Positions 13,390 to 62,605 of a DNA stretch of 64,000 bases are shown one piece after another. The notes under the pieces are model-generated. The model was not told the origin of the DNA and did not search any database. It worked only from the letters and a program-made list of their open reading frames with translations. How positions within the stretch are numbered: position 1 is the stretch's first letter; each line of letters begins with the position of its first letter. The position numbers and the translations under genes are program-made. Source of the stretch: Octopus sinensis (lineage: Eukaryota); NCBI RefSeq assembly GCF_006345805.1, contig NC_043014.1, forward strand, positions 52,576,001-52,640,000, given 5' to 3'.

Positions 13390-13455
13390 TATACATGTGT
13401 ACATTCATACATGTATACCTGCATACATACATACATACATGCATACATACATACA

Positions 13456-13489
<34 letters not shown>

Positions 13490-14440: not shown

Positions 14441-14568
14441 GGTTCAAAGAAACAGAAAAAAAGAGGCAAGTGAGAGAACAACAAGCGGGTATAACCGTTT
14501 GACCGTCGGCAAAAAAACCCCCAGAAAAGTCTTTGCCGTATCGACTCAGCGCTCTTCGACAGCAAGAG

Positions 14569-18289: not shown

Positions 18290-20175
18290 TCTTCTATTTT
18301 TTAATTATTATAAATATTCCACTGAAGAGGGAGCAGGTTTCCAACAAAGATACAAGGCTCCATCTTTGGGATGTATCGTAGTTAACACAGACAAACTTAC
18401 ATTTGGAACTTGAGAAAACTCTTGCATATTTTTACTGTTCCACTCACAGATTGCACTTGTAATGTATGAATCAGCTGGGCAATTGCTCTTTCTGAAAATC
18501 CCAGTTTATCCTGAGTCTCCTTTAAGCATTTACTAACAAAACCTAGTGTTCCGATCATTATTGGTATGAATATGAATTCATATTCTGGATAGAGAAGCTG
18601 GAGGTTTCAAAGCAGTTATCTATAGATATCCTTTTTTTCTTTGATTTTCAAAGAGATATTTATATCTGCAGGGCAGCCAGCCTCTCTGACAGGGCATATC
18701 TTTGCCCCTCTGTCCCAAACAACAATATCCAGCCTGTTCTGCTTACATTTAACAGACGTTTTGAGGGGAATATTCCACCAGTATTCCATGAGTTGGTGTT
18801 TATGAATGTATTCCGAAACAGAGGAATTTTCTAAGTTTATTTCAGGACAGGCTTTTTTGTAGATGGCGTTGTAAAAAGGTTTTAGCGACAACATCGTGCC
18901 GCATTGGGACACATTTTAGGACAGCTGCTAATCATATGTATGATGTCTTCCACAGAAACATGACATAGCTTACACATGCGGTTGCACCTTGAGATTACAA
19001 GAGCATCACTGTGTCTCTTGTTCACCAGGTACTTTGTGGCAATCTCCTGTTCCTGGATTGCAAACACAAAGCCTTCAAAGTGTGATGTGATGTAGTGGTC
19101 TTGTGTCCAAGAGAGGCTGTGCTTTGTGTCAATTCTACCGTCATCTTCAAGCTTCTGGGCAACATACCCATGCATAGTCTTTTTTTTTCTTTTTGTATGC
19201 TGAATGCTTTCCATTCAGGTCGTCTCTGAGTTAAGAGAGCCCAGCTGTTTTGGGGCTGTATAGGAGATCACCTGGAAGAGAGTGCTTCTTGAGGAGCTCA
19301 CCGCCAACTCGTACAATGTTGCTCACCTCACTTTTCAGCACTGCATTTATATATTTATTTTTGCTGTTATTGTTCAGGAGGTGCAGCTTGAGTGATACCA
19401 TACAGCATTCGAAAGCCTTCTGTAATGATCTCAGGCTTCTACCACCTTCGCTTTTTCTTAGGTAGAGCCAGTCAACATTACTGTTTCTGTGGAAGTTCCC
19501 AATTGTTGTCAGGATTTTGCGGTTTTTTATATTTATGGAGTGGATTTCCTCTACAGACCAATCAAGTATCCCAAATATTAGGATTAGCACTGTGCTACAA
19601 ATGCATTGTGGGATATTGTTTTGTTGTAAGAGGAGAGTTGTAATTGTCATATTTTCCCAAGTCTGGTGTAATATTCTCGGGTCACTCTATCTTTATTCAC
19701 AGTGCCTTCATATGATACATTTTCATCTATGCCTAGGTACTAGTAACATTCTTTGTGAGGAATGGGAAGATAGAGAGACCGTTGATGCACAGGTTTGGGG
19801 TTTGGAGGACTGACTTTCCTCGTTCTATAACCAAATATGAACCTTTCTTTTCGCCAAATTCCACGCCTATATCAGCTGAAACTGTTATTAGTTTCAGTTG
19901 CTTCTTTGGCATTGTTAACACTTTTAGCATAAATCTTGAGGTCGTCTACAAAGAAATTATGAGATACATTGATATTTCTAGCAGTTGAAGATCTTAGCAT
20001 GTAACCGTTTGTTTTCTGCAGTAGGAACGAAAATGGATTCAGTGTCAAAATGAAAAGAAGTACAGAAAACCTATCTTCCGGGAATATTCCCTTTGAAATG
20101 CCTATATTATCTGAAATAATTATTCTGTTCTCAGTTGGAAGGGCGAGATTGTTTTCTATGTCTTTGTGAGTCTCG
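18290..20175 (-). mobile_element. 5'-truncated R4/Dong-like (RLE) LINE, subfamily B copy 1
   Basis: RT motifs KGIFPEDRFSVLLF and SHNFFVDDLKIYA, GGRSL, FEGFVFAIQEQEI, CCHC CKLC..EDIIHMISSCP, RHD and a PD-D/ExK-type RLE region. Many stops and frameshifts. Confidence 0.9.
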
Positions 20176-20313
20176 TCTATGTATGTATATTTGTATGTAT
20201 GTATGTATGTATGTATGTATGTATGTATGTATGTATGTATGTATGTATGTATGTATGTATGTATGTTTGTATGTATGTATGTATGTATGTGTGTATGTAT
20301 GTATGTATGTATG

Positions 20314-20985
20314 TTAGGTCACTTTCGAGTGCTACTGGTAACATGTAACCCAGAACAACCTGTTGCATGGTCGGGCCGTCGGCGACTATACCGGCAACCC
20401 CACCAAGCTTGCTTGCTGAGGAGGGTGATTATTGGACACCCTGCGGGATGAAAACAAAACCCGTCAAAGGGCGGAGGAACTCTTGAGAGTTAACGGCCAT
20501 CCGATAAATGTGCATTTTTTTTTTCTCTTAAGGCTTAAGGCTGTATCATGCGCGGGGACATAGAAATAATCAGACTGAATATCCGATCGCGCGGTTAAAC
20601 CATTGGGATTGGAGGACTCCTAGCCTTTGTTAGGGCATCCTCCTAGGAGAAGGTAACTCAGGTAACTGGGATAACTCCGACATAAAACCTGCGGCGCAGT
20701 GGTTACCGATGATGTTGACTCGTTCTTCTTTTCGGATTATGGCAGCTGTTGCTTAGTGAGTGGAATTGACTCTGTACACAGCCTTTCCTCACTTTAAAAA
20801 AAATCTTCTTGCACAGGCATTGCACGATAACAACATTGTTCATGATTGTTGATGGTGCTGTGAGTCTCAACTGAATGGTTGGATGTAGCCTTAAAAAGCA
20901 AATAAAAGTCACATTCGATCACAGCACCAATAACAGTTAAGCTTCGTGCAATGGCCATACTCGATAACGTGGGGCAGCCATCATC
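20314..20985 (+). mobile_element. Non-coding, non-autonomous element of about 670 bp flanked by (TATG)n, with an RTE-like 5'UTR signature
   Basis: Second copy at 501-843. ctaggagaaggtaactc..ataaaacc resembles RTE leaders (recalled, not verified). No ORF. Confidence 0.6.
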
Positions 20986-21056
20986 TATGTATGTATGTAT
21001 GTATGTATGTATGTATGTATGTATGTATGTATGTATGTATGTATGTATGTATGTGC

Positions 21057-22440
21057 AGATTTACATGTTTTATGTATTCTCATGCTTATAGTTATATATC
21101 TAGACATTATCATATGTAATTAAATGATAAGCTTCAGGAAAGTTTTACAGATATTTACAGTTCCAGTGATGGATTGGGTCTGTAGTCTTCGAATTAGCTT
21201 TCTCCTTTCTGGTTTTGAGAAGCCTAATTTCTCAAGATTGGTATTTAGGCAGTGTATTACATATCCCAGGACCCCAATAATTACAGTTATAAACCTGAAC
21301 TTGTAATCTGGATAAAGTCACTGCAGATTTCTCAATAGTTCAGCGTTGGTGTTCTCTTTTTCACTGATCTTCAGCTTTGTTAACATCCACTGAGCAGCTA
21401 ATTTCCACAACTGTGCACAGTCTCTCTTCTCTATCTCAAATCATTATATCAGGTATTTTGTGCTTACATTTTAATGAGGTCTTCACTGGTACATTCTACT
21501 AGTATTCCTATTCATTATGACTGACTATGGCTTCTACCATATTATGGGTTTTTATTTCTTTATCCTCAAGATTGTCCTTCCGACGGAATTTCATTATAGA
21601 ATGTACTAGCTACAACGATATGTCTCATTGGTAGATGATACCGTGGTGACATTTTCGGACAACTGCTTATGATGTGGGTGATATTTTCAGCGTGAACTCC
21701 ACAAAATCTGCATCGGTTGTCACATTTTACGGCTTTTCCTGTATCTCTATCCTTTGTGTGCATCAGGTACTTGGTTTATATTTCCTGTTCCTGGATTGCA
21801 AACGCATACCCTTCAAAGTGGAAGGTTGTAATTCGGCTGTTGGTCTATGATAAACTGCTTTGATGATCATTGTTACTATCATCACGGAGTTTTCTACTAA
21901 CAAATCCATGCATAATCTTCTGCTCATATAGGCTTATCCTTTCATATGATAATACGTTGCGGTAGAGTCGTGCAACTTCTTTGGGTATGTATTCTAGGTT
22001 ATCAGACAAAAAGTGTTGCTCAACGAAATGCCTTTCAAGTCTTATGATGTTATCAGCCTCATGTATGCAAACTTGGTCTAGGGATGCACTTCCACGCTTG
22101 GTGGTTAAAAGATGTCGCCGAAGGGATATCATGCAACATTCAAAGGCATCTTTATGCACATATTAAAATTAATCTCATTCTAATAATGGGACGAGCACTT
22201 AACCTTCATCCTTCACGTTCATATTTGCATAAAGGACATTCTTTTCTCAAACAAATTGTAAGTCATACTCGAGGCTCCGATTAAGCTACAAAGGGTTACT
22301 CAGGCACTGAATTCTAAGTCCCTTGCATTTTATAACGGAAACAGCTGTAAGCTAATGACGTTTAATTCCTTTGTCATCTCATCTTATTACCGCTCTGTAC
22401 TGGACTAACGCTTCTTTCTGGACCACATCTATACTGAGTT
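21057..22440 (-). mobile_element. 5'-truncated R4/Dong-like LINE, subfamily B copy 2
   Basis: FECCMISLRRHLL and CDNRCRFCGVHAENITHIISSCPKM are homologous to copy 1. The 3' UTR runs directly into (CATA)n. Confidence 0.88.
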
Positions 22441-22457
22441 CTACACCAATTTATTAG

Positions 22458-22593
<136 letters not shown>

Positions 22594-22809
22594 CATACAT
22601 ACATACATACATACATACATACATACACACATACATACAAGGAATGCAGAAAATGGGGATGGAGATAAAACTGATGAATAACAATTGATTTACATCAATT
22701 ATCATTTATTAATTACAAAAAGACAGAATCTCAACTTACAGCTGTTTCTGTTAGCGCGATTCCCAGGCTTAACCACCACAATAACAATATTAATAATAAT
22801 AATAATAAT

Positions 22810-24478
<1,669 letters not shown>

Positions 24479-26819: not shown

Positions 26820-27350
26820 AGAACCGACATTGTTAGCCATGATATAGATGTAGGTGATGCTGTGCCTGGTAAACAACTTCCGCATCGGATGAATCCTATG
26901 AAAAGTAAAACTCTGCGGAAAGAGGTGAAACATATGCTTGACAATGATATTATTGAACCCAGTGAGTTCGTGGAGTTCGCCTTGTGTACTTGTGCTGAAG
27001 AATGGTGAAGGTGGTTGGCGCTGCTGTGCCGACATAAAAGACCTCAATGCGCTCTCAAAAAATGATTCTTACCAAATTCTGAGAATGAGCGATTGCATTG
27101 ACCACGTTGGTCAAGCTCAATATTCAAGGGCTTCTGGCAGATTCCACTCACAGACCGCGCGAAGAAAATATCTGCTTTTGCTACACCAGTTGGACTATAT
27201 CAATACAAAGTGATGGCCATGGTCTGAAGAACGCGCTAGCAAAAGATTCCAGAGACTCGTCAACAACGTCACATCCGGTCTTGACGGTGTTGAAGCCTAC
27301 ATGGATGATGTCATTACTTACTCCATGGAATGGGAAGAGCGTCTGAAGAG
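26820..27350 (+). mobile_element. Ty3/gypsy reverse transcriptase fragment
   Basis: MLDNDIIEP.SSWSSPCVLVLK..WRCCADIKDLN, GFWQIPL, SAFATP.GLYQY and AYMDDV, with frameshifts. Confidence 0.9.
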
Positions 27351-27393: not shown

Positions 27394-27863
<470 letters not shown>

Positions 27864-28420
27864 TTTATCAAAGTTATTCAAAAAAATATATTGGAGTGTA
27901 TATTTTTTGTGAAACTAGGGCGGTTTTTATAGGTGACTTTTTTGTCAAATTGCGCCGAAAGACTAATTTTACGGGTGGTTTACCATCCATTCGGCATATT
28001 TTTATGGCTGGTTGGCTTCAAGCTGCTAGTTTTGTGGCAGTTGATCACATTATGCTTTTGTTCATGTAATATTTTAGCATTTCTCCTTCTGTCTTCGTCT
28101 TTCTATCTCCGTGTATGAGTTGTGTGTGTGTGTGTGTGTGTGTGTCTTTGTACATGTGCGTGTGTCTCTATGTGTGCGCATGCGCGCATATGTGTTTAGC
28201 TTTCTAAAAACCTTGCATTTGTTATGAGCTAATGGCAGCACCGTCCCAGATGTTGAAGTGGTCAAGTGGTATTCCACTGTGGAATTCATGCGATATTTCT
28301 ACAGACTTAGTAGTTGTGCGTAGCAGATGTTGGGGCGGCATTCAATGAGTGAGACACGTTTCTTTTTATTATTATTTTTTAACCCTAACTTTCTATCTTC
28401 TTTTCTTCTTTTTTACACAG

Positions 28421-28529
28421 TGGAGGGTCTGAAGGTTGTGGAAATTGAAAAATGTCAGCAGGATATTAAAGATATCAAGAATGAAATGTTTTCTTCTGAG
28501 AAGAAAGTCATTGATTACACTAGAATGAG
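28421..28529 (+). CDS. PDE9A: PDE9A-like exon (MEGLKVVEIEKCQQDIKDIKNEMFSSEKKVIDYTRM)
   Basis: ttttacacag acceptor, gtaagt donor, 109 bp. EGLKVVEIEKC is identical to PDE9A. Confidence 0.95.
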
Positions 28530-28578: not shown

Positions 28579-31490
28579 CTAGCAGAGATACCCGGCGTTG
28601 CCCGGTTACATTCAATTGAAGAATTAGACTTTTCTGTTATATATATATGGATACACACACACACATATATGTATATTAATATAAATACATGAAAGTACAT
28701 GAAGTTTGTTAAAAAAATGGGATCATGAATATACCGCCTGGCTGTTGAGATTATAACACCTCGTTGTAAACAATGTTCCTGATGGAGTAAGAGGAATTCT
28801 TGGAATAAAGGCGTCATCACCTTTTCCACATCCAGAAAGAATGATCGCCTCGATAACGTGTGACATCATTTTCTTTATCACCAGTCGTGTTCCATCGCAA
28901 AGTCTTGGTGGTTCCAGATTGCGGAGTAGCATTACAGGAGTTCCAACTTTAAGTGCTAATATGTGTGGGGGTAGTCCAGGAGACTCCAGTGAATTGAGGA
29001 ATTCAGGAGGAGAGTTCACAACTTCATTTATATCTGAAATTGTATCAACAGACTTGTAAGTGTGTATAGTGCCGGGAAGAGAATGCATTAGCTGTTGATT
29101 AATTTTGTTAACAGCGACGTTTTTTGGAGCTAATATTGCTCTTTCACACAGCCAATTGTGATTTTGGTAGTTTTGTGTGAAGTTGTGTGAAGAGGTCATC
29201 TACAGAATTAACAACAGAGGAAAATGACCACACTTCCATTTGTCCTGCAGCATCGAGAGGCATCTTGCCTTCACCAAGTGTCAAAATGTCCTGTGCAAAC
29301 TTTGTGGACATTTTGTCGCCGTGTAGCTGAGCTCTCATGTTAGTGGTGAGACTGAGGATTGTAACATGATGCCACAGGGTAGAAGACTTTAGGCATGCTT
29401 GGACTTCATCTGCTCTAGTGCCTTTCAGAATGACAGGAAGAGTTAACCTGAAATCACCTGACAACAGAAGCGTTACACCTCCCATTGGAGCCTGACAGTC
29501 TCGGATGTCTTTCAGGGCTCTATCTAATGCTTCCAAAGCTCCCTTGTGAGCCATAGTGCACTCATCCCAGACAATCACATAACACATTTTAAGTACTTGT
29601 CCCTGATCTGAGCATTTGTTGATGTTGCATGAAGGCATTTCGGATGCTGCTAAATTGAGAGGGAGTTTAAAAGTTGAGTGTGCTGTTCTGCCACCGGGTA
29701 ACAAAGTAGCTGCAATGCCAGAGGAGGCTATAGCTACTGCAATGTCCTGATGCTGCGTAACTTCTGCAAGGAGAAGCTTTGTAATAAATGTTTTTCCTGT
29801 CCCTCCAGGAGCATCGAGGAAGAAGATTCGTCCCTCGCGTTGGCGTACACTGTTAAGAATAGTTCTGTAGGCCTGCAGATGGTCCGGAAGTAATTTAGGC
29901 TCATTTTCAACAATGCACTTTGAAAGCGCTTGAGTGTGGTGGGTTGTTTCACGAATGACAGCAGTGGGAAGGCTATTTGACCCTGACCTGAATGCTTGTG
30001 GCAGGCCATACGTCGACAATTCATTTCCACCCAGTTTAGCAATTCTGTTTTCAATGTCAATGAGTGTTTTGTTATAGATTTCATTGCTGATACCCTCCAT
30101 GTCAGGATAGAGCAGTTGAGCCTGGCGCTGAAAGTCTTCAGCCAGGTTGTCTCTATATTTGAGCCATAGAGTGGCCGGATCACACAGTTCGCATGCCTGT
30201 AGTAATACTGCAAATAGTACCCTGAGACTTTTAGATTATTGTGATAAAGCAGTCTCCTCTAAAGTTGCATCCCATTGTGTACCATCTTCTAACGGACCTT
30301 GTCGTTAGCAGGCTTCTCTGTATGGTGAGCAGACATGTCCATGAACGGTTTTTAGGGCCTGGAAAGACGTTGGCCCTCTGACCTCATACAGTAGTAGACG
30401 AAGGTCGAAGCACTCTTGTTGAGTGAGATGCGCTGAGTATACTCGCCCAAGGCAAGTGTGAAACTTAATGCCAGGGTATCCATGAACATTTTGACCTGCT
30501 TTCCGTGGGGCCCATTTGTTTTCCATTCCAAGTGTAGTACGATGGAATCTATGGATACAGCAAGGTTTGAGTGAATGGATCCACTTGACAAAGCTTGAAG
30601 AATGCAGTGAGTGTGCTATTCCTTAGTTCCTCTGCCAACAGAGAAGCATTAGCATCGGTGAAGTACACTCTTTGATCATTTTCCAGGTGCACTGCAAGCT
30701 GTTGAATGGCGGGGTGTCGTTGGTGAATTGGAAAGCCAAAGATGCGCCAGAAAGCCTCGTTGCTACTTATGTACCGTCCCACCTGATAATGCGTCACCTC
30801 ATCCTGGCAGTATTCTTGTTGAAGTCCAAACATTGCAGCGTCAGAACCCTTGTTTACATATTTGCAAACGTACTTGATGGATTTAACGGAGTTGCAAAAC
30901 TAAACGTTGATGTGGGCATTGAAAGTCTTTGACAGGAGTGGGCAGTATGGAACAATCCATCTATTATCAATGTCGTGCTGTCCGATAGCTGCTGTGAAAC
31001 CTCCGTCTTCTGGTTTTCTGCGTCTGTATGATGGATACCCATCAGCACCTGTCTGAGTTTCTTGTAGGAACCTCCTTGGAAATCTTTTTGAACATATGCT
31101 GTCCTTCAAGCATGGTATGTTTATGTTGAATCCACACCCACATGGACCATGTACCATGTTTGCTGTAACTATTTCGTATAGTTCTTTGTCTAAAGCTGGA
31201 TCAGGAAGCTCTGCAGAGATTATGTTGTCGATGTCATTGGAATCGATCTTCGCTGAGAGCCAAAGCAGGATATGAGCATGTGGAAGGCCCCTTTTTTGCC
31301 ATTCGATTGTGTACATGTCACATTGTATGGGCCCAAAGACTTGCCCTTTTTGTATGAGCTCCATGAGAGAGATTAACTTCAGATGGAAAACTCGGGCGTT
31401 GAGATTCCGGTTCGAATGTAAGGCAGGTTTGAAAGTGTTCCCAACAGTTATTAGTTGTAGTGGTAGAGTGTTTATGCCGAATATATACGT
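28579..31490 (-). mobile_element. Helitron (Rep-PIF1 helicase), 5'-truncated and internally deleted
   Basis: Rep motifs RVFHLKL, IEWQKRGLPHAHILLW and WIVPY..LSKTFNAHINV. Helicase motifs LDAPGGTGKTF, WDECTM, GDFR, LTTNMR and LKVG.PVMLLRNL. 3' hairpin accgggcaacgccgggt plus CTAG|T at 28579-28582. Confidence 0.96.
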
Positions 31491-31496
31491 ATGCAA

Positions 31497-31590
<94 letters not shown>

Positions 31591-31599
31591 GTCTGTATA

Positions 31600-31740
31600 T
31601 ATGTACAAAATCCACTGAGAAGGCTTTTGTTGGTCTGAGGCTTCAACAGAAGACACATGCCAAGTCACCACACAGTGGGACTGAACCCAGGACCATGAGT
31701 TTGGAACATAGTTTGTTACCACACAGCCACACCTGCCCCT
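31600..31740 (-). mobile_element. SINE family A head, diverged
   Basis: aaatccact..aggctt..agaagacac..gggactgaaccc..accacacagccac. Confidence 0.75.
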
Positions 31741-36619: not shown

Positions 36620-37400
36620 GCATAGACTTAATCTTTTCTCTGACGAGCCTATGGCCAGCTCAGCACTCATCAGCACGCAACGAACGAATGATCGATGCAC
36701 ATATCATGAACATCATGCCTATGGCTGGTAGAATAAGATGCCACTGCTTTGAACCAAAGTGCATCCATATAGTCTCAAATCTTTTGAAGCAAAAGTACCC
36801 GTTACCGTTACACATGCCATGTTTTCTTATGATGTTCCGTACCTTAAAATCCCTTTCTGTTCTTGCATTAGAATCACGAAGAATGATAGTTTTGTTAGCT
36901 TTAAGAATTTTCGGGACAAATTCTTTCAGAGACGTGTTGAAGAAAGCTTTTTCAGCTTCAGACGAACACAGTTGAAGCAAACACACCAACAAGTATTACA
37001 TAGCAGTCATCGATCAACAGAAGTTTCTATAGGGAAGGTTTTCCAGACCTGATGAGACTTTGGATGTTTTCACCACCAAAGTTACATCATATACTCTTAT
37101 ACTCCTCGCCTTTACCACTCAAATAAAACGTATAGCCACTAACATGTTCCGTAAAACGACCTTCATTCGCAAGCCTTGTGTCTGAGAGCGCAGCAACGTC
37201 CGAGTTGTAGGGCTGCAACTGCTTTGCTACAAATGTAGAGCTTCTTTCAGGATGTGCTATTGATTCATTATCTAGAAACATTTTCTCGCAGCCACAAGAT
37301 GACGACCGAACCTAGACTGCGGTGCCTTTGGAAACATGCTGGGCCAGAGACTTTAACAATTTGTTCCAGAGCCTCTCTTGCCATTGATACAGCACCATTG
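36620..37400 (-). mobile_element. RTE LINE apurinic endonuclease fragment
   Basis: YNSDVAALSDTRLANEG..SGYTFYLSGK and IILRDSNAR..IRKHGMCNGNG. Confidence 0.8.
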
Positions 37401-37510
37401 TTATTATTGTCATTCGCCTTCATTGAATATGATTAACCTTTTTAGACTACGACCAACCTTTCAAATGAAGACAAAAATACATAATTGTTGTCTACATTTA
37501 TTATTTCCAG

Positions 37511-37585
37511 TATACATTGTCACAAGAGACCGTTGATTATCTGAAACAGCCAACATTTGACATTTGGTATTGGGAACCGAACGAG
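37511..37585 (+). CDS. PDE9A: PDE9A-like exon (YTLSQETVDYLKQPTFDIWYWEPNE)
   Basis: tttccag acceptor, gtaagt donor, 75 bp. Strong match to the start of the PDE9A catalytic domain. Confidence 0.96.
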
Positions 37586-38163
37586 GTAAGTAAGCTAAAT
37601 GCGAATTACTGCTTCTCTGTGTTTTATTACATTTTTTTAAAATATTTTTTTCTTTTTTGTGTTCCTTCTTCCCGAGTAGCATCGTCAATCGTTAAAAACC
37701 ACATCTTCAAATACGCAAAAACACACTCGCGCATATGCACATGCATACGCACATGCACGCATACACACACATACAGTTGTACATGTACACTAATACATAC
37801 ACACACATAAATATGTACACGTAAAAATAGATGCACACAAATACACAAGGTGTGTGTACATGTGCAGATAACGTATTTGTGTGTTTATGTGTGTGTGTGT
37901 AGTATTTTTATTTGATTCATTCACTGGAGTGTGGTCAAGCGGAGTACCACCTAGAAGAGTTGTGTCTGTCAAATCTACTCCAGGACTTTTTTCAAGTTTG
38001 ATACATCATACGTGAGTATGTGTATATGTATTACTAATAATATCAAGGAAATGTGTGATAATTGAGCTAGACGGCTTGACGGCTTATGTAATAACAACAA
38101 CCCCTGTACTGAAACACGTGTATGTTATATAATAAGACTAACAAAAATAACAATTAAATTTCA

Positions 38164-38199
<36 letters not shown>

Positions 38200-38607
38200 T
38201 GTATGTATGTATATATATATATAGGTTTTTTATTCTTTTTTCTAAAAATCCCCTTGTAAACACGGTTCTAGAGCGTGCATACCAATGTAAACATTGGCTA
38301 AAACACACCTTTAGTTCATATAAGTAATTTCTATCATTATATATAATTTAAACATTAATTTTCTTTTTACATTTCACATGCACTAGATATACATTTTTCC
38401 TAATCTATAAGGTTTTATTTAATATACATATAGTCATATACTTCTCATTTAGTTTTTCTTTACTTTATCCCTCCTCCTTCTATAGGCTACCTCTGACGTC
38501 ATATCCTATAACGTTTTTTTGAAACAATATTAATAGCGTTCAGTTAATCACTATACATATTCATCATTTTCTTTTAAAATGCCTTATTGACGAGTTTCAT
38601 TTCTTCT

Positions 38608-38694
38608 TTTCCCTGAAGAGAAGATTACATTGTTTTACACCATTTTATTCCTTTGGAATAATATCAGTGATATCTTCGAAACATGTGTCGGAAG
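38608..38694 (+). ncRNA. Minimal type I hammerhead ribozyme with intact core, sense to the PDE9 intron
   Basis: tttcc-CTGAAGA-gaagat..[loop]..atcttc-GAAA-c-atgt-g-TC-ggaag. Stem I 5 bp, stem II 6 bp with basal G-C, GUC cleavage triplet at 38687-38689. Confidence 0.75.
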
Positions 38695-38699
38695 TAAAA

Positions 38700-39290
<591 letters not shown>

Positions 39291-39307
39291 TAAAAAATGC
39301 TTTCCTT

Positions 39308-39357
<50 letters not shown>

Positions 39358-39957
39358 TCGCTCGATGCAGGGTGGGGATTAAAAATGTTCGTTGCTACTT
39401 AAATCCCAGCAATGGCCCACTGCATCATTATTCCATAAAATGTGTTTATGGGGAGAAAAATATTTTAAAATGTCAATGTATGCAACAAAAAAACGAGGAA
39501 GGTAACAGGTGGTCGCCGTTGAATCACACATCTTTCCGTCTCAAAATTATACACCGAAACAAATTGCAGATTCAGACACTGGATTTATGGTGTGGGCGGG
39601 GTTAATGTAAAAATTTTAAAATTTCATAACTGTCTTAAAATTACGCTTTATTTTGTGTTTGAAGATAAAGGAAGTGGATATTGAAATGGTGATCGCCGAT
39701 TTCCATTTCTTTTAACTTCCAAAGTGTCTTCCATCGTTTTTAAGCGCATAGTGCAAAAGAAAAAGAAAATGGCGAAAATTGGTACTGAGGGGGGGGGGGT
39801 GAAAAGTACGTAATTTTTCAAGACTTTTTTTTTTGTACTGCAAAGGCGTCTCCCATTGTTTTTAAGTGCGTAATGGAAAAAAAAACAATTGGACAAAATC
39901 GTTCTGGAAGGTATCTGAAAACATTCTTGTTCATTCTTTTTTTTTTTTTACCTTCAG

Positions 39958-40044
39958 ATGTTAAGCCTTCTCGAACATATGTACCACGAAATCGGTTTAG
40001 TTGACGAATTCAACATTAACTCTATCACATTGAAACGATGGCTG
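39958..40044 (+). CDS. PDE9A: PDE9A-like exon ([29 protein letters not shown])
   Basis: Long T tract plus ccttcag acceptor, gtaagt donor, 87 bp. Matches [29 protein letters not shown]. Not present in the ORF track. Confidence 0.96.
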
Positions 40045-40374
40045 GTAAGTAGCATTTTAAGTGATTTATTGAGTAATGTTCAGATATTCTCTCTTTCTAA
40101 CTAAGCACGTTGACATATCTAACTAGATGGTAAATAAATAAGGTGGGTTGTATGTGTGTGTGTGTGTGTGTGTGGAGACACAGCATGGCCAAATGTCAAA
40201 GAATTACATAGACATGAGCTCGATCCCATACCCTTACCCATATTCGGTTCACGATCGCAAAGTCGTGAGTTCGATTCTCGTCGACGCGTTTTGTCCTTCA
40301 GCAAGACACTTTATTTAACGTTGCTCCAGTCCACTCAGTTGGTAAAATTGAGTAATATATATATATATATATAT

Positions 40375-40896
<522 letters not shown>

Positions 40897-41845
40897 ATAT
40901 AAACGTTCTAGGAAATGAATGCTTCCGTAAAAACATTGCCCACAGATGTAGCGTCTGAATTAAGGCAAAGGTATTTGCACATGTAAGTGCAACAAGCGAT
41001 TACTTCAAACATTGTTACGGTAATTAAGTTGCATCATTTCATAACATCGACAAAAAGCACACCCCGTCCCTCACCGATCTGATTAGGAGTTCCAGAGATA
41101 AGAAAATAAATTATGATATATTCTGGACGGTGGTCAGAAATGGATATCCAATTCAAGCAATCTTTGTTCTGAAGGGATACTGCGCAGTTTAATATGCAGA
41201 GGTGAACTTAATAACAGGCACTCTGAATTCGCCGTAAAATGTAACCACAGGATAAAATATTCTTCTAAGGAATTTGGAAAAATTGTTGAATATTGATCAT
41301 TCCATTAATTTGTTTGTTTAATTATACACGTGTAGGCATTTTATTCTGCAAACTCCTACTGGGTGTTTTTTTTTTTTGTTGTGAAATTTTGCAATAACTT
41401 ATACACCTATAGTGCTTATGTACCTGTATCGGTATTCATGTAGGGTACGTATATATAATGTTTCTATTTGCCTCTTATTAATTATATGTGTATAGGATTT
41501 TTGCCGTAAAATTGTCCACCGAATGATGCATGTATGTCCATATCTATATTCCTGTTGGAGTACGAATATCTAATACATGTCTATATACATAATCTAACCG
41601 CATGGGCGGTTTTGATATAAATACTATATGTTTGTGTGCGTGTGTGCGGTTACGTATTTATGTGTGAGTATATGTCAACGTAAATGAGTTTAGCTGGCTG
41701 AAACTTCGAAGTTAAGGTCATAACTATTCTTATTGAAGAACAATAAATTTGTTCTCCACTGAATGTATTGAGTAATTCTTCAATTTGATGTAAATTGTTT
41801 TTCTTATATCCTAAAAACAGACATTAATATCTGTATACATATATA

Positions 41846-44101: not shown

Positions 44102-44289
44102 TTATGTGTTCTTGAAAACTACCGGAACAATCCCTTCCACAACTTCCGCCATTGCTTCTGTGTGGCTCAAATGATGTACGGGATGATACACTTATGTGGG
44201 TTATCCCAATATATGCCATTGGAAGATATCGGTATACTGCTGACAGCTGCCGTGTGTCATGATCTAGATCATCCGGGCTACAACAACAC
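44102..44289 (+). CDS. PDE9A: PDE9A-like catalytic exon ([23 protein letters not shown]...[11 protein letters not shown])
   Basis: Carries the class I PDE metal-binding motifs FHNFRH and HDLDHPG. ttttcag acceptor, gtaagt donor, 188 bp. Confidence 0.98.
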
Positions 44290-45314
44290 GTAAGTCGACG
44301 AGGCGATACTGTTAATGGTTTTGCGTGGATTTTCATATCAGGGAGTTTTCAAAACAAAATGGTGTTATGGTGGTGTCATGGCAATGTAGACATGAAACCA
44401 AGCTAGAAAGGTAAAACGGAAACTTCTTCTGTTGTGAGATGTTGTTTTTGTTGATTAACTTTAGGTTAACTGCGAACCAGCAGATCTATAACCAACGGCG
44501 TTCCTATCATGACAATCCCAGCCTTGGAAACTACATTTTTCAAAGCGCCCTGTCTTAAGAAATAATTTGAGAGAGAAAGGGGAAGAAAGAGAGGAGCCAG
44601 AGAAAGAGAGATTTTGTTGCTATATCGCGTGTGCTCAGTGACCACTTCAATATCCAATCCAAGATTTAGGAAAGTCACTTTGGAAAACGCCATCCTTCTA
44701 AAAGAACGAAAACCCACTGAAAGGTTGCATATTCTTTGCAAAGTTTTCCGGAAGCAATGATATTCTCATTCATACATTTTTCTTCAGCATATTTATCTTT
44801 GCTGTCCAGTACACCTCTATTCTTGTGTGGATATTGTTGCCTTCCAAATCAGACCAGACTGAACTGACCTATAGTCAAAATTCTTCCAGTCACATCCATT
44901 CAGTATTTTATTTGTACTTAGTGCAGTCAGCGCCACATTATCTAGCATTTTCTTTCTCAATGTCCGTCTTAAAAATAGGAAGGTAATCCCACATTGGTTT
45001 GAATGAGATTTGGACACTATATCTGCCGGGAAGATGTAAAGATTCTCGTATGCCTTTAGCTTGTATTCCATGTGTTTATGATGTTAGCAATCACGTAACT
45101 CCACAAAACTATCAGTGAGCAAAGGATTGTTGCATCGATCACGCTGCTAAGCAAACAAGATTATTCGAAACTGTCATTGCAATTGAACGAAGCATCCATC
45201 AGTTATGCAGTGCCCCCACTGTTTCCAGTGGACCTGTGACTATTCATTGTGCTTCCTTACAGCTGACTAGATTCTGATTTCATATCACAAACTGGTTTTA
45301 AAGACATCCTACCT

Positions 45315-47442: not shown

Positions 47443-47599
47443 ATACCAAATAAATGCCCGTACAGTTCTAGCTATCCGATATAACGATATTTCCCCATTG
47501 GAGAACCATCATTGTGCTGTGGCGTTTCAGATACTTTCAAATCCTGAGTGTAATATCTTCGCCAATTGCGACAAGGAGAAGTTCAAACGCATCAGAGCG
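47443..47599 (+). CDS. PDE9A: PDE9A-like catalytic exon ([23 protein letters not shown]...KRIRA)
   Basis: LENHH motif. tttctcag acceptor, gtacgt donor, 157 bp. Confidence 0.97.
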
Positions 47600-48300: not shown

Positions 48301-48632
48301 AATGGATAGAGGCGGGAGAGATGTGTATGATTAGAAAAAGGAGATAGATCAAGTCAAAAACAGGAAGAGAGAATGGGAGGAAAAAAAGAAGAAGCAAAAG
48401 GGAGTGGAACAAAAAGAAATGAAGAGAGGGAACGAAATGAGAGAGAGTGTGTTAACTAGTGGTCAGAATAAAGTGATAGGAAGAAGAGAGAGGTGAGGGG
48501 GAGTGTTAACTAGTGGTCAGAATAAAGTGATAGGAGGAAGGGAGAGGTGGTGGTGGTGGTGGTGGTGGTGGTGGTGTCGAATACTAATTCCGGACAATTA
48601 ATGGCTGACTTCAAAGAAATTTCCATTTTCAG

Positions 48633-48746
48633 GGTATAACGATGTTGATTCTAGCGACTGATATGGCGAGACATGCTGAGATTATGGACAAATTTAATTC
48701 AATAGTTTCTGATTTCAACTTCGAAAACAAGGATCACTTGAATACG
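48633..48746 (+). CDS. PDE9A: PDE9A-like catalytic exon (GITMLILATDMARHAEIMDKF...DHLNT)
   Basis: ILATDM motif. ttttcag acceptor, gtaaag donor, 114 bp. Confidence 0.97.
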
Positions 48747-49315
48747 GTAAAGTCTCCAATAGTCTAGCTTCACTTTCACTTGGCTTCTTTCTCTCTTTCT
48801 CTCCTTCTTTCTTTCTTCCTTTCTGCCTTTCTGCCTTTCTTTCTTTCTCTTTTGCATTTTAACAGTCGTTGTAGATGGTGGTAGTGATGATGGTGGGGAT
48901 GGCAGTGGCAGCGATCCTGACATTGGTGATGAGGTGGTGGTGGTGGTGGTGGTGGTGGTGGTGGTAGCAGTAGAAGTAGGGATGTTAGTGTTACTGTTGT
49001 TGTTGGTGGTGATGGTGATGGTGGAAATGGTGATGGTGGTGGTAGTAGAGGTGGTGGTGGCATTAGGTTTGGTGATGGTGGTGTTGGTGGTGAAGGTGCT
49101 AGTGGTAGTGGGGTGTTGGTGATGGTCATAGTGTTAACTGTGATGGTAAAGATGATGATGATGGTGATGACGATGTGGTGATAATGGGTGGTGATGATGG
49201 GTGTTGATAATGAGGGTGGTGATGATGGGTGGGGAAGATAGGTGGGGATGGTGACAATAGTAGCGATGACGACGACGATGATGATGATGTTGTTATGATA
49301 TCGATGTCGTTCCAG

Positions 49316-49549
49316 CTGAAGATGGTGCTCATCAAGTGTTGCGACATCTCCAACGAAGTGCGTCCAATGGAAGTGTCCGAGCCGTGGGTTGACTGTCTCC
49401 TGGAGGAGTACTTTAACCAGGCTGACCGGGAGAAGCTAGAAGGACTACCAGTGGCACCGTTCATGGACCGAGACAAGGTCACTAAACCTTCGGCTCAGAT
49501 CGGCTTCATTAAGTTTGTCCTCTTACCCATGTTCCAGAGTGTAGCTAAG
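49316..49549 (+). CDS. PDE9A: PDE9A-like catalytic exon ([17 protein letters not shown]...[20 protein letters not shown])
   Basis: [11 protein letters not shown] and AQIGF (invariant Gln) are PDE9-diagnostic. ttccag acceptor, gtaagt donor, 234 bp. Confidence 0.98.
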
Positions 49550-50808
49550 GTAAGTTGTTGTTGTGTTGTTGCTAGTGGTGACGGTGGTGGTATGGTTGGA
49601 GTAAGGTTGTTGGTGTAAACGGCGAGAGTGGTGGTGGTGGTGGTGGTGATTAGTATTTTTGTTGTTGCTGTTGTTGTAAGAAGTGGTGTAGTGTAAGCAG
49701 CGGAAGTGATGCTAATGATAGTTTGAGTCATTTGATGAACGGTTAAAGATGGTTTTACCCATATTTATTTCCCTTTCTTTACTTTCATTGATTTTTTTTT
49801 GTCCCCTGGAATCATATAACTAATATTAATTTAATCCTTCGAGGCCTACCTTCCTTGGCGTTATTTGATCTTGTGTCTGGGATCCTGAGCCATTTGTGCC
49901 CAGCTCTGGCAGGGATTAGAAGCAAGACTTTAATAATGAGGTTTTCCCAGAGTTATCATCCAGTAATATATTTACAAACTCAATGGTCTTAGACTGACCA
50001 TTTATGCTATCTGGAATGTTTCTGGGCCCTCAATTTGAAGCATTAAATCGGCATGTGCCAATGGTTTTGGCATTGTTTTGTAGTGCCACGACCCCTTTTT
50101 GCACCGCTCGAATCATTATCTGAATCATTTCTGCTGCAGCTGCCTTCATTTCCTTCACCGTCCGTCATCATCAGAAACATCTGGCTAATCCACATCATTT
50201 TAGGCGTCCAATTCATTAAATTCATCTAAAATGCTAAGCACTTGGCTGAGAGTGTATAGCTTCTGACTCTTGCATTTTGATCCTGACTAACCCGGCTCAT
50301 TTTCACACACTAGAAATATATCGTCAAAACAATCCGACTGGGCGCAGACATATTGCCTTACTTTGGGATGTGGCAGATGTTCCCATTGGTCGATCAAAAC
50401 AGGGTCAAGACTTGCAGAATCAAACACATGCTGCACCCAATAACCCTGTACCAGTAAAGCGGTGCAGGGTTACTGAATGTACGCATTGCATTGCAACTAT
50501 ATCGGTGTTACGGGCTGAATAATGAATGGTTTCAAATTTATTTCGGAGGATGAATAATTGTTTCGAATTTATGTTAGAAAATAAACAAATTCAAAATAGA
50601 ATATAAACATGATAAATTTTAAAATCCTAAATTTTAAATTCTATTTTAATTCTTTTTAAGAAAATTTTAAATTCAAAAACTTTTATTGGAAAGAAATATT
50701 ACAATTATTCTTTAAATTTTTAAATCTAAAAAAGACTCTTGGATGGAAAAATGGCAGAACGGTGAACTCGAACCATCTATGTAGAGCAACCGGACATTCG
50801 CGATGCAA

Positions 50809-51000: not shown

Positions 51001-51478
51001 TATGTATGCATGTATGTATGTATGTATGTATTTGTATGTATGTATGTATGTATGTATGTATGTATGTATGTATGTATGTATGTATTCATGTATGTATGTA
51101 TGTATGTATGCATGTATGTATGTATGCTTATACGTTGTGTTGTGCGAAGCAGCGTTAAATAAAACATATCCATATGAAATCGTAATTTCATATTCAACAC
51201 GTTCGATTACACTCGGACATGAGAAGACCGTCAGGTGCAAAGATAATCCCCGAGTCAGCTCCAAGATATGTGTGAAAACATAAGTTAGGCTGTGAATTAC
51301 GTCACACATGTCGAAGAAAATTTGCTCTCCACAGTGGAAGGTCTTCTCACGTCCGAGTGCAATTGAACGTATTGAGATGTCTTTACGTGTGTGCGCGCGC
51401 GCGTATTGATTCGAAATCAGATTTTGAATTAAAATAAACACTTTATAAAATGATTTTTTACAATTTTTATTTTCACAG

Positions 51479-51572
51479 CTTTTTCCTAAAATTGAATCGT
51501 CCATGGTAGTACAGTTACAGGGAGCACTAGAACGGTACGAGGAGATGAAATTACACGATGATGCTCGTAAAA
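51479..51572 (+). CDS. PDE9A: PDE9A-like exon (LFPKIESSMVVQLQGALERYEEMKLHDDARK)
   Basis: ttttcacag acceptor, gtaagt donor, 94 bp. Matches [31 protein letters not shown]. Confidence 0.93.
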
Positions 51573-56382: not shown

Positions 56383-56725
56383 TACTGAAGCACTCTTGTT
56401 GAGAATACTATTAGTTTTTGAAAAGTTTCAAAATATTATATGCATGAGGGCATGTGTATTATGTGTGTGTGAAAGGGAGAGAGATAGAGAGTGTATGTGT
56501 GTGTTTGTGTATATACGTGTAAGAATATTATATGTATTATGATGGATGCATAAATATACTCAAATATTTCTGTGTACAGACACACACATACTATATGTGT
56601 GTGTGTGTGTGTGTGTGCGTGCGTGCGTGCGTGTATATATGTATATATATATAATATTAGAGAGTATGGCTCCAAACTTACAGGGAAAAATTAGATTTAG
56701 TATTAAATCAAATTTCACAGTATAA

Positions 56726-56942
56726 ATATATAAAATATCAATTAGAGATAAAACCACTATTAGGCAACTCAAACAGTGATAGACATAAACCAATACATAA
56801 ATAACAAATAATACAAACATATATATATATATTTATTATATATTAATTATATTTGTATTATTTGTTATTTATGTATTAGTTATGTCTATCACTTTTGAGT
56901 TGCCTAATAGTGGTTTTATCTCTAATTCATATTTTATATATA
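56726..56942. repeat. Fold-back inverted repeat with AT-rich spacer
   Basis: attagagataaaaccactattaggcaactcaaa..gatagacataa versus its reverse complement at 56878-56925. Confidence 0.9.
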
Positions 56943-57012
56943 AATATATATAATAGGGAGTATAACTCCAAACTTACAGGGAAAAATTCAATTTAGTATT
57001 AAATCAAATTTC

Positions 57013-57397: not shown

Positions 57398-57454
<57 letters not shown>

Positions 57455-57634
57455 ATAATAAATATTAGGGAATATATCCAAATTTACAGGGAAAAAAAAA
57501 TCAGATTTAGGATTAAATCCAATTTTATAGTAAAATATTATAAAATATTATTTGAGACAAAACCACTATTTTGCAAAACAAACAAGGAAAGACTTAATCA
57601 ATACATAAAATTTAATAAATAGTCAAAAAAACCG

Positions 57635-57677
57635 CCACTACAATCGTTTCTTGTCTTGATCGACAATCTTCAGGTGG
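57635..57677 (-). ncRNA. Minimal type I hammerhead ribozyme with intact core (43 nt)
   Basis: ccac-CTGAAGA-ttgtc-gatcaa-gacaa-GAAA-c-gatt-g-TA-gtgg. The basal stem II pair is U-A rather than G-C. Confidence 0.7.
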
Positions 57678-61646: not shown

Positions 61647-61838
61647 ATTCTCTTATTCTTTACTTGTTTCAGTCATTTGACTGCGACTATGCTGAGCACC
61701 GACTTTGGTCGAACAAAGTTACCCAAGGACTTATTCTTTGTAAGCTTTATTCTATCATTCCCTTTTGCTGAACTGCTAAGTTACGGGGGCATAAACACAC
61801 CAACATCGGTTGTCAAGCGATGGAAGGGGACAAACACA

Positions 61839-61881
<43 letters not shown>

Positions 61882-62045
61882 GTATATACGACGGGCTTCT
61901 TTCAGTTTCCACCTACCAAATCAACTCACAAGACTTTGGTCGGCCCGAGACTACAATAGAAGACACTTGCCCAAAGCGCCACACAATGAGTCTGAACTCG
62001 GAACCATGTGGTTTGGAAGTGAGCTTCTTACCACACAGCAACTTC
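61647..62045 (-). mobile_element. SINE family A
   Basis: Collinear with 27394-27863. Confidence 0.88.
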
Positions 62046-62605
62046 TAGTTTATATATATATATAAATAATTTAAAAATAGGATAATATCTTTATAAGAAT
62101 TTATCAAGTAGTTAGCGTGAAAAAACTGATAAGAGAAAAATTCACCAATTTTTTCTCTTAAATATATTTATTTATATTATATAGAAGGCATTACCATTCA
62201 TAAATGCCACACGCTATGGGGGGACTCTTAAAGTCAAAACTACCAAAATAATTAAACACATCGTACCGAGTGCGAGGGAATGCAAATCTCGAAACAAGCC
62301 ACTCCAAAAAAGAATTCAGCTGCAAATCACATGATTTCATAATTGGTACAGAAATGCACTTTTTAATCATCAGTGCAAGCATAATTCAAGATTTATAACG
62401 AATGAAGAAAAATCAACATACCAGACGAACAACCAATGTATCTAACATAGCATATAGAAATGTTCTATATATATACTCCGGTTAAATTTACAATTTAAAA
62501 ATAGGATAAAATCTTTATAAGAATTTATCAAGTAGTTAGCGTGAAATGCAGTTCGAAAGAGCCCGTCATTTACATAGATGTATGAAGGTTGAACATATGC
62601 ATATA

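What the first reader, a model, noticed from the sequence alone, without database searches (positions are those of the whole stretch)
38608..38694. Intact hammerhead ribozyme in the sense strand of a PDE9 intron
Seen: all core nucleotides are present (CUGAAGA, GAAA, GUC). Stem I is uuucc/ggaag. Stem II is gaagau/aucuuc with basal G-C, extendable by cauug/cagug. Stem III is ACAUGUGU, only 2 bp as a monomer but fully self-complementary (two G-U pairs) as a dimer. It lies in intron 37586-39957, directly before a 600-bp fold-back. Known: PLE termini carry minimal type I hammerheads that work best as dimers, and intronic hammerheads exist in other animals. Inference: PDE9 pre-mRNA could be cut after 38689, affecting co-transcriptional splicing or releasing a structured RNA. 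Activity may be weak for a single copy.
Basis: partly seen in the sequence, partly recalled or inferred. Interest (0 to 1): 0.75.

Follow-up and report, generated by a model that had tools for sequence, protein, structure and literature searches.

The report
Solo transposon-type hammerhead motif in intron
A complete hammerhead ribozyme motif does lie in the sense strand of an octopus PDE9 intron, but it looks like one of the many stray, weakly active hammerheads that retrotransposons scatter through animal genomes, not a regulator of the gene.

Summary
Window 38608-38694 (+) carries every hammerhead core nucleotide (CUGAAGA, GAAA, GUC), a 5-bp helix I, and a helix II with a 6-bp base including G10.1-C11.1. 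Helix III is 2 bp and self-complementary. The motif sits in PDE9A intron 37586-39957 of Octopus sinensis, and a 588-nt fold-back starts 7 nt after the predicted cut.

It is not chance. Shuffles give 0.012 such motifs per window, and 0.0007 at this quality. A decoy-core control on the real sequence gives 0.006. I found a second, compact motif of the same dimer-type design at 57635-57677 (-).

The best reading is a solo copy of the minimal type I hammerheads carried by Penelope-like elements and retrozymes, which are mostly found as single motifs. That origin is inferred. No RT or endonuclease remnant, tandem partner or paralog is in the window, and Rfam scores it at 17.8 bits against a gathering score of 34.

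The functional inference is weak. Helix III is predicted unformed in the monomer. In genomic context helix I is predicted not to form and core nucleotides pair with upstream sequence. Published single PLE motifs show no detectable cleavage.

Conservation in other octopuses could not be tested with these tools.

The parts
38608..38612 (+). Helix I, 5' strand (uuucc)
   Evidence: Pairs with 38690-38694. Found by the descriptor scan. Pair probability 0.22-0.75 in the isolated 87-mer but 0.00 with genomic flanks.
38613..38619 (+). Catalytic core C3-A9 (CUGAAGA)
   Evidence: Read directly. Aligned to the Rfam Hammerhead_1 core.
38620..38677 (+). Helix II. The 6-bp base is 38620-25/38672-77 with G10.1-C11.1. 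A 46-nt distal part (38626-38671) folds into 5-bp and 7-bp segments.
   Evidence: MFE and centroid folds. Pair probability 0.88-0.95 in isolation and 0.53-0.72 in genomic context.
38678..38680 (+). Core G12 A13 A14
38681..38688 (+). Helix III region ACAUGUGU. It is 2 bp plus an AUGU loop as a monomer and 8 bp, including two G.U pairs, between two copies.
   Evidence: Monomer pair probability 0.03-0.04. The canonical double-hammerhead dimer is -37.2 kcal/mol, against -30.0 for two monomers and -40.2 for a shifted-register dimer.
38689..38689 (+). C17. The predicted scissile bond is 38689/38690 (GUC triplet).
   Evidence: Position follows from the core alignment. Cleavage itself was not tested.
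38690..38694 (+). Helix I, 3' strand (ggaag)
37586..39957 (+). Host intron of PDE9A (GT..AG), between the exons ending ...WYWEPNE and starting MLSLLEH...
   Evidence: tblastn exon map, splice sites, annotated O. sinensis protein XP_029647481.1, and locus L002, which is 100% identical to window 8195-55736.
38696..39283 (.). Fold-back. Arms about 38696-38878 and 39085-39283 (93% complementary over the outer 97 nt), around an inner palindrome 38881-38984 and a (TA)n run. The left arm starts 7 nt after the predicted cut.
   Evidence: Its relation to the hammerhead is unproven.
57635..57677 (-). Second, compact hammerhead-like motif (HH2): CCAC|CUGAAGA|UUGUC-GAUCAA-GACAA|GAAA|CGAUUGU|A|GUGG. It lies outside the annotated gene, on the other strand. 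It is supporting evidence that such motifs are enriched here.
   Evidence: Descriptor scans. The dimer MFE is exactly the double-hammerhead fold. It has U10.1-A11.1 instead of G-C and no Rfam hit at E<=10.

Best explanation
HH1 is a genuine member of the hammerhead ribozyme class. It is of the minimal, dimer-type type I design that Penelope-like retroelements and their non-autonomous derivatives (animal retrozymes) carry and scatter through invertebrate genomes. Here it is a solitary copy that landed, or was left behind by truncation or decay, in the sense strand of a PDE9A intron of Octopus sinensis.

In its original element, two neighbouring copies would pair through the self-complementary helix III to form a double hammerhead that cuts after C17. 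As a lone copy in the pre-mRNA it is expected to cut very slowly or not at all, and to be a neutral passenger of the intron.

Shown: the complete core and helices, the non-random occurrence, the intronic sense-strand position, and the dimer-type architecture. Inferred: the retroelement origin, the low activity and the absence of a host function.
For: - Complete core and topology. Rfam Hammerhead_1 aligns end to end, positions 1-45 of 45.
- Far above chance by shuffles and by decoy cores on the real sequence.
- A second motif with the same N7=A core, short helix I and self-complementary 8-nt helix III lies in the same 64 kb. Such a helix III never appeared among shuffle hits.
- Several published traits of PLE min-HHRs are present (PMC4209133): helix I of 4-5 bp without a defined loop 1, an enlarged helix II, G10.1-C11.1, and a palindromic 15.2-16.2 plus loop 3.
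- The same paper states that most such motifs occur 'widespread as single elements', probably from truncated PLEs. It also reports that single motifs show no detectable cleavage and dimers only low activity.
- Penelope elements are among the abundant repeat families in octopus genomes (PMC13282606, PMC8967140).
- Fold predictions: helix III is essentially unformed as a monomer, and the dimer is favoured by 7-10 kcal/mol.
- HH2 abuts a locally repeated ~170-bp unit that ends in (TA)n and has direct and inverted partial copies. This is the kind of arrangement reported for PLE insertions (PMC8557442).
Against: - No RT or GIY-YIG remnant was detected in ORF fragments of 36-41.3 kb or 52-63.7 kb. 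That test had low sensitivity.
- There is no paralog, tandem partner or flank similarity between HH1 and HH2 in the window.
- HH1 lacks the unpaired nucleotide between A9 and G10.1 that is typical of PLE min-HHRs.
- HH1 has an unusually long (58-nt) helix II.
- The Rfam score of 17.8 bits is below the gathering score of 34.
- Family membership by copy number and consensus could not be checked, because no octopus genome could be searched.
Confidence: 0.65

Rival explanations
1. HH1 is a solo monomer of a different hammerhead-bearing non-autonomous element, either a non-LTR retrozyme or an Sm-alpha-like SINE, and not a truncated Penelope-like element. The chemistry and the likely inertness are the same, but the parent family differs.
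For: - No PLE coding remnant lies nearby.
- A helix III of 2 bp plus a tetraloop is described as typical of invertebrate retrozyme hammerheads (PMC7229834).
- A 2026 preprint lists 'solo retrozymes' and finds about 43% of Xenopus copies in introns (10.64898/2026.07.22.740005).
Against: - There is no tandem array and no repeat unit around HH1.
- There are no recognisable loop 1 / loop 2 tertiary-contact elements.
- No tRNA-like head is present.
- The preprint argues that retrozymes derive from PLE pLTRs, so the distinction may be one of degree.
Confidence: 0.2
2. HH1 is a domesticated intronic ribozyme. It cuts the PDE9A pre-mRNA co-transcriptionally and thereby tunes mRNA output or releases the downstream fold-back RNA.
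For: - Sense-strand intronic position with an intact core and the optimal GUC triplet.
- Precedents exist: conserved intronic hammerheads of amniote RECK, CTCL and DTNB (PMC6155905), and the intronic CPEB3 ribozyme whose inhibition raises expression (PMC10919898).
- The fold-back starts 7 nt after the cut.
Against: - The 2-bp helix III is predicted to be unformed.
- In genomic context helix I is predicted at 0.00 and core nucleotides are sequestered.
- No tertiary-contact loops are recognisable.
- No partner copy lies on the same strand.
- Single PLE-type motifs are inactive in vitro (PMC4209133).
- No conservation data are available.
Confidence: 0.05
3. HH1 is a chance match with no ribozyme ancestry.
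For: - A genome of about 2.7 Gb (my own estimate of the size) would hold roughly 30 chance motifs of HH1's helix quality and about 500 at the lax level, extrapolating.
- The fold z-score of the 87-mer is only -0.8.
- The Rfam score is below the gathering score.
Against: - The per-window expectation is 0.0007-0.012 and 0.006 by decoy cores.
- A second independent motif lies in the same window.
- Both motifs have the self-complementary helix III, which was never seen among shuffle hits.
Confidence: 0.07

Closest known systems
Minimal hammerheads of Penelope-like elements (Cervera & de la Pena 2014, PMC4209133)
   Same: - Type I topology.
- Helix I of 4-5 bp with no defined loop 1.
- Enlarged helix II.
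- G10.1-C11.1.
- Very short, palindromic helix III that implies action as a dimer.
- Mostly found as single dispersed motifs away from any intact element.
- Low or undetectable activity as single copies.
   Different: - HH1 has no unpaired nucleotide between A9 and G10.1.
- Its helix II carries a 46-nt distal extension.
- No pLTR, RT or GIY-YIG context was found.
- Membership in a multi-copy consensus family is untested.
Non-LTR retrozymes and amphibian satellite type I hammerheads (Cervera & de la Pena 2020, PMC7229834; Forster et al. 1988 as cited there)
   Same: - Type I hammerhead.
- Helix III of 1-2 bp capped by a palindromic tetraloop.
- Efficient cleavage only as a double hammerhead.
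   Different: - Those occur in 150-450-bp tandem arrays and usually keep loop 1 / loop 2 tertiary contacts.
- HH1 is single, has no array, and shows no recognisable tertiary-contact loops.
Conserved intronic hammerheads of amniotes (RECK, CTCL, DTNB; de la Pena & Garcia-Robles 2010, summarised in PMC6155905)
   Same: - Type I hammerhead in the sense strand of an intron of a protein-coding gene.
- Thought to derive from retroelement hammerheads.
   Different: - Those are deeply conserved, have stable helices and tertiary contacts, and cleave efficiently.
- None of this is shown for HH1, and Rfam clan CL00010 models give only the weak Hammerhead_1 match.
CPEB3 HDV-like intronic ribozyme (PMC10919898)
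   Same: A self-cleaving RNA in an intron of a neuronal gene. It is the functional model for what HH1 would be if it were domesticated.
   Different: - It belongs to a different ribozyme class.
- It is conserved across mammals.
- It has measured co-transcriptional kinetics and an effect on expression.

Membership tests
Hammerhead ribozyme, type I (Rfam RF00163, clan CL00010) | Conserved core C3 U4 G5 A6 N7 G8 A9 / G12 A13 A14 / A15.1-U16.1 / H17 | tested here: met
   All positions are canonical, with a GUC triplet and C17.
Hammerhead ribozyme, type I (Rfam RF00163, clan CL00010) | Three helices around the core with helix I open-ended | tested here: met
   Helix I is 5 bp, helix II is 6 bp plus an extension, and helix III is only 2 bp plus a tetraloop. 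Helix III is marginal.
Hammerhead ribozyme, type I (Rfam RF00163, clan CL00010) | Score at or above Rfam's gathering threshold | tested here: not met
   17.8 bits against 34. The match is seen only when 121 nt are searched (E = 0.049). Nothing reaches the gathering score over the whole window. The 54-nt insertion in helix II costs most of the score.
Hammerhead ribozyme, type I (Rfam RF00163, clan CL00010) | Site-specific self-cleavage giving 2',3'-cyclic phosphate and 5'-OH ends | not testable with these tools
   Needs in vitro transcription or end-specific RNA-seq.
PLE minimal hammerhead (PMC4209133) | Short helix I (4-5 bp), enlarged helix II, G10.1-C11.1, palindromic 15.2-16.2 and loop 3 | tested here: met
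   HH1 has 5 bp, 6 bp plus extension, G-C, and a self-complementary ACAUGUGU. HH2 meets all of these except G10.1-C11.1.
PLE minimal hammerhead (PMC4209133) | Unpaired nucleotide between A9 and G10.1 | tested here: not met
   In both motifs helix II starts directly after A9. Allowing the bulge in the scan gave no other solution.
PLE minimal hammerhead (PMC4209133) | Location in a pLTR next to an RT / GIY-YIG ORF, or in a recognisable truncated PLE | tested here: inconclusive
   No RT or endonuclease Pfam hit in 135 ORF fragments of at least 45 aa around HH1 and HH2. Even the PDE exons were missed at this fragment size. The literature says most copies are solo.
PLE minimal hammerhead (PMC4209133) | Belongs to a multi-copy consensus family with covariation within the genome | not testable with these tools
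   No octopus genome beyond this locus could be searched. There is no paralog in the window and none in metagenome or viral contigs.
Non-LTR retrozyme (PMC7229834) | Tandem repeats of 150-450 bp, each with a type I hammerhead | tested here: not met
   No tandem unit and no second hammerhead next to HH1 or HH2.
Domesticated intronic hammerhead (amniote RECK/CTCL type) | Conservation of the motif at the orthologous intron across species | not testable with these tools
   The O. vulgaris gene range is too long for DNA retrieval. A six-frame query around HH1 found no related contigs. The only cephalopod contig reached is distant and covers another exon.

The most novel reading that the evidence does not exclude
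HH1 is a retroelement hammerhead that has been co-opted in octopus. Slow co-transcriptional self-cleavage inside the PDE9A intron competes with splicing, as proposed for the CPEB3 ribozyme. Alternatively, it frees the adjacent 588-nt fold-back RNA, which begins 7 nt after the cut, so that ribozyme kinetics set the level of a cGMP phosphodiesterase or produce a long dsRNA.
Probability: 0.04. Interest if true: 0.7.

Novelty: new member of a known kind. Interest (0 to 1): 0.25.

Why it matters
If the ordinary reading is right, this documents that octopus genomes carry the dispersed dimer-type hammerheads known from other invertebrates. I found no paper describing them in cephalopods. It also shows that some of them sit in the sense strand of introns of neuronal genes. 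This is useful for repeat annotation and as a caution for ribozyme scans, but it is not surprising.

It would matter much more if the motif proved to be conserved at this intron or active in vivo. That would add an invertebrate example to the very short list of host-gene intronic self-cleaving ribozymes.

Tried and rejected
1. Rfam at gathering score over the whole window found nothing. Rfam by E-value on 701 nt gave only spurious sub-threshold miRNA-family matches to the fold-back's inner palindrome. The hammerhead model appears only on a 121-nt stretch. HH2 gets no Rfam hammerhead match.
2. The loose pattern CTGANGA..GAAA..TH gave 19 matches. Apart from HH2, none has a helix II adjacent to the core (re-checked). 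A scan for the U3-A8 core variant found nothing.
3. I looked for a repeat family within the window. There is no other copy of the HH1 region or of either half, and no flank similarity between HH1 and HH2 beyond shuffles.
4. The search for PLE coding remnants found none.
5. Cross-species test:
   - The first PDE9 query returned only short, distant fragments.
   - The Logan contig L001 is only 77% identical in one exon.
   - The full query identified the locus as O. sinensis.
   - The O. vulgaris gene is too long to fetch.
   - The six-frame query around HH1 found nothing.
   - Exact-pattern scans of metagenome and viral contigs found nothing.
6. I considered the idea that the fold-back is an inverted cDNA copy of RNA whose 5' end was made by the ribozyme. 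The arm boundary lies 7 nt from the cut. However, the alignment allows a weak extension across the cut (GGAAG / TGTG, with a 15-nt insertion), and the arms are arranged 3'-to-3', unlike the usual PLE head-to-head inversion. This is left open and is not claimed.
7. No tRNA-like SINE head is present.

Full report
**Where the window is from.** A PDE9 query built from the window's exons matched Octopus PDE9A proteins at 100% identity. The O. sinensis gene locus for XP_029647481.1 (GCA_006345805.1, CM016876.1:52,584,195-52,631,736) is 100% identical to window 8195-55736. The window is therefore O. sinensis CM016876.1:52,576,001-52,640,000. PDE9A runs on the + strand.

- tblastn places coding exons at about 28417-28527, 37493-37585, 39958-40050, 44102-44290, 47444-47599, 48630-48752, 49298-49570 and 51455-51571.
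- The annotated protein reads ...FDIWYWEPNE|[10 protein letters not shown]....
- The donor GAG|GTAAGT is at 37586. The acceptor, a polypyrimidine tract followed by CAG|ATG, is at 39957/39958.

**The motif.** Window 38608-38694 (+) reads uuucc-CUGAAGA-gaagau...aucuuc-GAAA-CAUGUGU-C-ggaag.

- Every invariant hammerhead position is canonical: C3 U4 G5 A6 (A7) G8 A9, G10.1-C11.1, G12 A13 A14, A15.1-U16.1 and C17 in a GUC triplet. The predicted cut is at 38689/38690.
- My own structural descriptor found it independently.
- Helix II is a 58-nt three-segment hairpin of 6, 5 and 7 bp, and it appears in the MFE and centroid folds.
- Rfam's Hammerhead_1 model aligns over its whole length but scores 17.8 bits against a gathering score of 34. 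It is reported only when a 121-nt stretch is searched. At gathering score the window has no Rfam match at all. The long helix II is the main cost.

**Is it chance?**

- Dinucleotide-preserving shuffles of the window give 0.0075 (400 shuffles) to 0.012 (2998 shuffles) motifs per window, both strands, for helices I>=4, II>=4 and III>=2 bp.
- For HH1's helix lengths (I>=5, II>=6) the figure is 0.00067.
- No shuffle hit had a self-complementary helix III.
- Shuffles destroy real inverted repeats, so I also ran 539 decoy cores on the real sequence. These were permutations of CUGAGA and GAAA with the same composition. The mean was 0.0056 hits per decoy. Three decoys had one hit and none had two.
- The true core has two hits.

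**A second motif.** The second hit, which I call HH2, is at 57635-57677 on the minus strand: CCAC-CUGAAGA-UUGUC-GAUCAA-GACAA-GAAA-CGAUUGU-A-GUGG.

- It is a compact 43-nt type I motif with the same N7=A. Its helix III 8-mer (ACGAUUGU) is again fully self-complementary with G.U pairs.
- It has U10.1-A11.1 instead of G-C and no Rfam match.
- It lies about 2.9 kb beyond the annotated gene end, on the opposite strand.
- Two motifs of one unusual design in 64 kb argue that this genome is enriched in real hammerhead-derived sequences.
- Looser scans found only these two.

**Architecture and predicted behaviour.**

- In the isolated RNAs, helices I and II are likely (HH1: 0.22-0.75 and 0.88-0.95). 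Helix III is essentially unformed at 0.03-0.04.
- Two copies are predicted to pair. For HH2 the dimer MFE is exactly the classical double hammerhead (-21.4 against -13.0 kcal/mol for two monomers).
- For HH1 the canonical double hammerhead is -37.2 against -30.0 kcal/mol for two monomers. A shifted register that uses the perfect ACAUGU palindrome and pairs G12-A13 with U16.1-C17 is better still, at -40.2.
- With natural flanks (38560-38760 or 38500-39300), helix I has probability 0.00 and helix III 0.00-0.02. GAAGA of the core and GAAAC pair with upstream UCUUC and GUUUC. Only helix II persists, at 0.53-0.72.
- These are thermodynamic predictions, not measurements. They give no sign that the active fold is favoured in the pre-mRNA.
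- No second copy on the + strand exists in the window to serve as a partner.

**Surroundings.**

- HH1 lies between a (TATG)n/(TA)n run at 38160-38226 and a 588-nt fold-back at 38696-39283. The outer 97 nt of the fold-back arms are 93% complementary.
- The left arm begins 7 nt after the predicted cut. The alignment allows, but does not establish, a short extension across the cut. I leave its relation to the ribozyme open.
- The HH1 region has no other copy in the window.
- It shares no flank similarity with HH2 beyond shuffled controls.
- On its own strand, HH2 is followed by a ~170-bp unit (57621 to 57452) that ends in (TA)n. Diverged direct copies lie at 56653-56810 and 56940-57011, and an inverted copy at 56859-56938. 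All three lack the hammerhead.
- Partial tandem and inverted copies and microsatellite targets are reported features of PLE insertions (PMC8557442). This is suggestive only.
- No RT or GIY-YIG domain was detected in 135 ORF fragments of at least 45 aa from 36-41.3 kb and 52-63.7 kb. This test is insensitive.
- No tRNA-like sequence is present.

**Comparison with what is known.**

- Cervera and de la Pena described minimal type I hammerheads in the terminal repeats of Penelope-like elements. Their traits are helix I of 4-5 bp without a defined loop 1, an enlarged helix II, conserved G10.1-C11.1, an unpaired base after A9, and a palindromic 15.2-16.2 and loop 3.
[quoted passage not shown] Single motifs show no detectable self-cleavage, and dimers or trimers show only low activity (PMC4209133).
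- HH1 matches all of these traits except the unpaired base, and it adds a long helix II extension.
- Retrozyme and amphibian hammerheads share the short palindromic helix III but occur in tandem arrays (PMC7229834). HH1 and HH2 do not.
- A 2026 preprint argues that animal retrozymes derive from PLE terminal repeats and reports solo copies, many of them in introns.
- Penelope elements are abundant in octopus genomes (PMC13282606, PMC8967140).
- A full-text search found no paper describing hammerheads in octopus.
- Host-gene intronic ribozymes with likely function do exist: the amniote RECK, CTCL and DTNB hammerheads (PMC6155905) and the CPEB3 ribozyme (PMC10919898). Those are deeply conserved and fast.

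**What could not be done.** The key test is the presence and state of the motif in the orthologous intron of other octopuses, together with a count of paralogs genome-wide. It was out of reach for four reasons.

- The O. vulgaris gene range (127.6 kb) exceeds the retrieval limit.
- A six-frame query around HH1 found no called ORFs in any related contig.
- The only other cephalopod contig reached is distant and covers another exon.
- Exact-pattern scans of metagenome and viral contigs were empty.

**Verdict.**

- The most likely identity, at about 0.65, is a solitary copy of a retroelement-borne dimer-type minimal hammerhead, in the PLE and retrozyme lineage, that rides in a PDE9A intron and is at most feebly active there. 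A further 0.2 goes to the same idea with a different parent element.
- Domestication (about 0.05) and pure chance (about 0.07) are not excluded.
- It is a new member of a known kind and of modest interest.

Noticed in passing
window 57635-57677 (-): A second, compact (43-nt) hammerhead-like motif with a complete core, helix I of 4 bp, helix II of 5 bp (U10.1-A11.1) and a self-complementary helix III (ACGAUUGU). It lies about 2.9 kb past the annotated PDE9A end, on the opposite strand. It has no Rfam match.
   Followed up: yes
window 57452-57621; 56653-56810; 56940-57011; 56859-56938: A ~170-bp unit lies immediately 3' of HH2 on its own strand and ends in (TA)n. It has two diverged direct partial copies and one inverted partial copy within 1 kb, none of which carries the hammerhead. 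This may be debris from a truncated retroelement insertion.
   Followed up: partly
window 38696-39283: A 588-nt fold-back in the PDE9A intron. The outer arms are 93% complementary. An inner GA/TC-rich palindrome at 38881-38984 draws many sub-threshold miRNA-family Rfam matches (best 49.6 bits against a gathering score of 85). If transcribed it would form a long dsRNA hairpin, a plausible A-to-I editing substrate.
   Followed up: partly
window 27574-27912, 40626-40958, 61677-62048 (+): Three copies of a short interspersed repeat, each just after a microsatellite. Their ORF translations share [20 protein letters not shown]. This is probably one of the abundant octopus SINE families.
   Followed up: no
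window 7517-8544 (+), 18616-24249 (both strands), 26938-27213 (+), 28723-31658 (-), 2522-3109 (-), 36660-36992 (-): Transposon-like ORFs inside and upstream of PDE9A introns. Judged by eye from the translations, they are mariner-type transposase, reverse-transcriptase-like fragments, a PIF1/Helitron-like helicase, a zinc-knuckle gag-like ORF and an endonuclease-like fragment. None was verified by domain search.
   Followed up: no
window about 13250-14500: A compound microsatellite of more than 1.2 kb of the (TATG/CATA)n type. It produces long spurious ORFs in several frames.
   Followed up: no
window 38494-38501: A perfect TGACGTCA palindrome (CRE-like) 107 nt upstream of HH1. One or two such 8-mers are expected by chance in 64 kb.
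   Followed up: no
PDE9A locus, O. vulgaris GCA_951406725.2 compared with O. sinensis GCA_006345805.1: The annotated gene range is 127.6 kb in O. vulgaris (520-aa product with 66 extra N-terminal residues) and 45.5 kb in O. sinensis (454 aa). The O. sinensis model probably lacks upstream exons.
   Followed up: no
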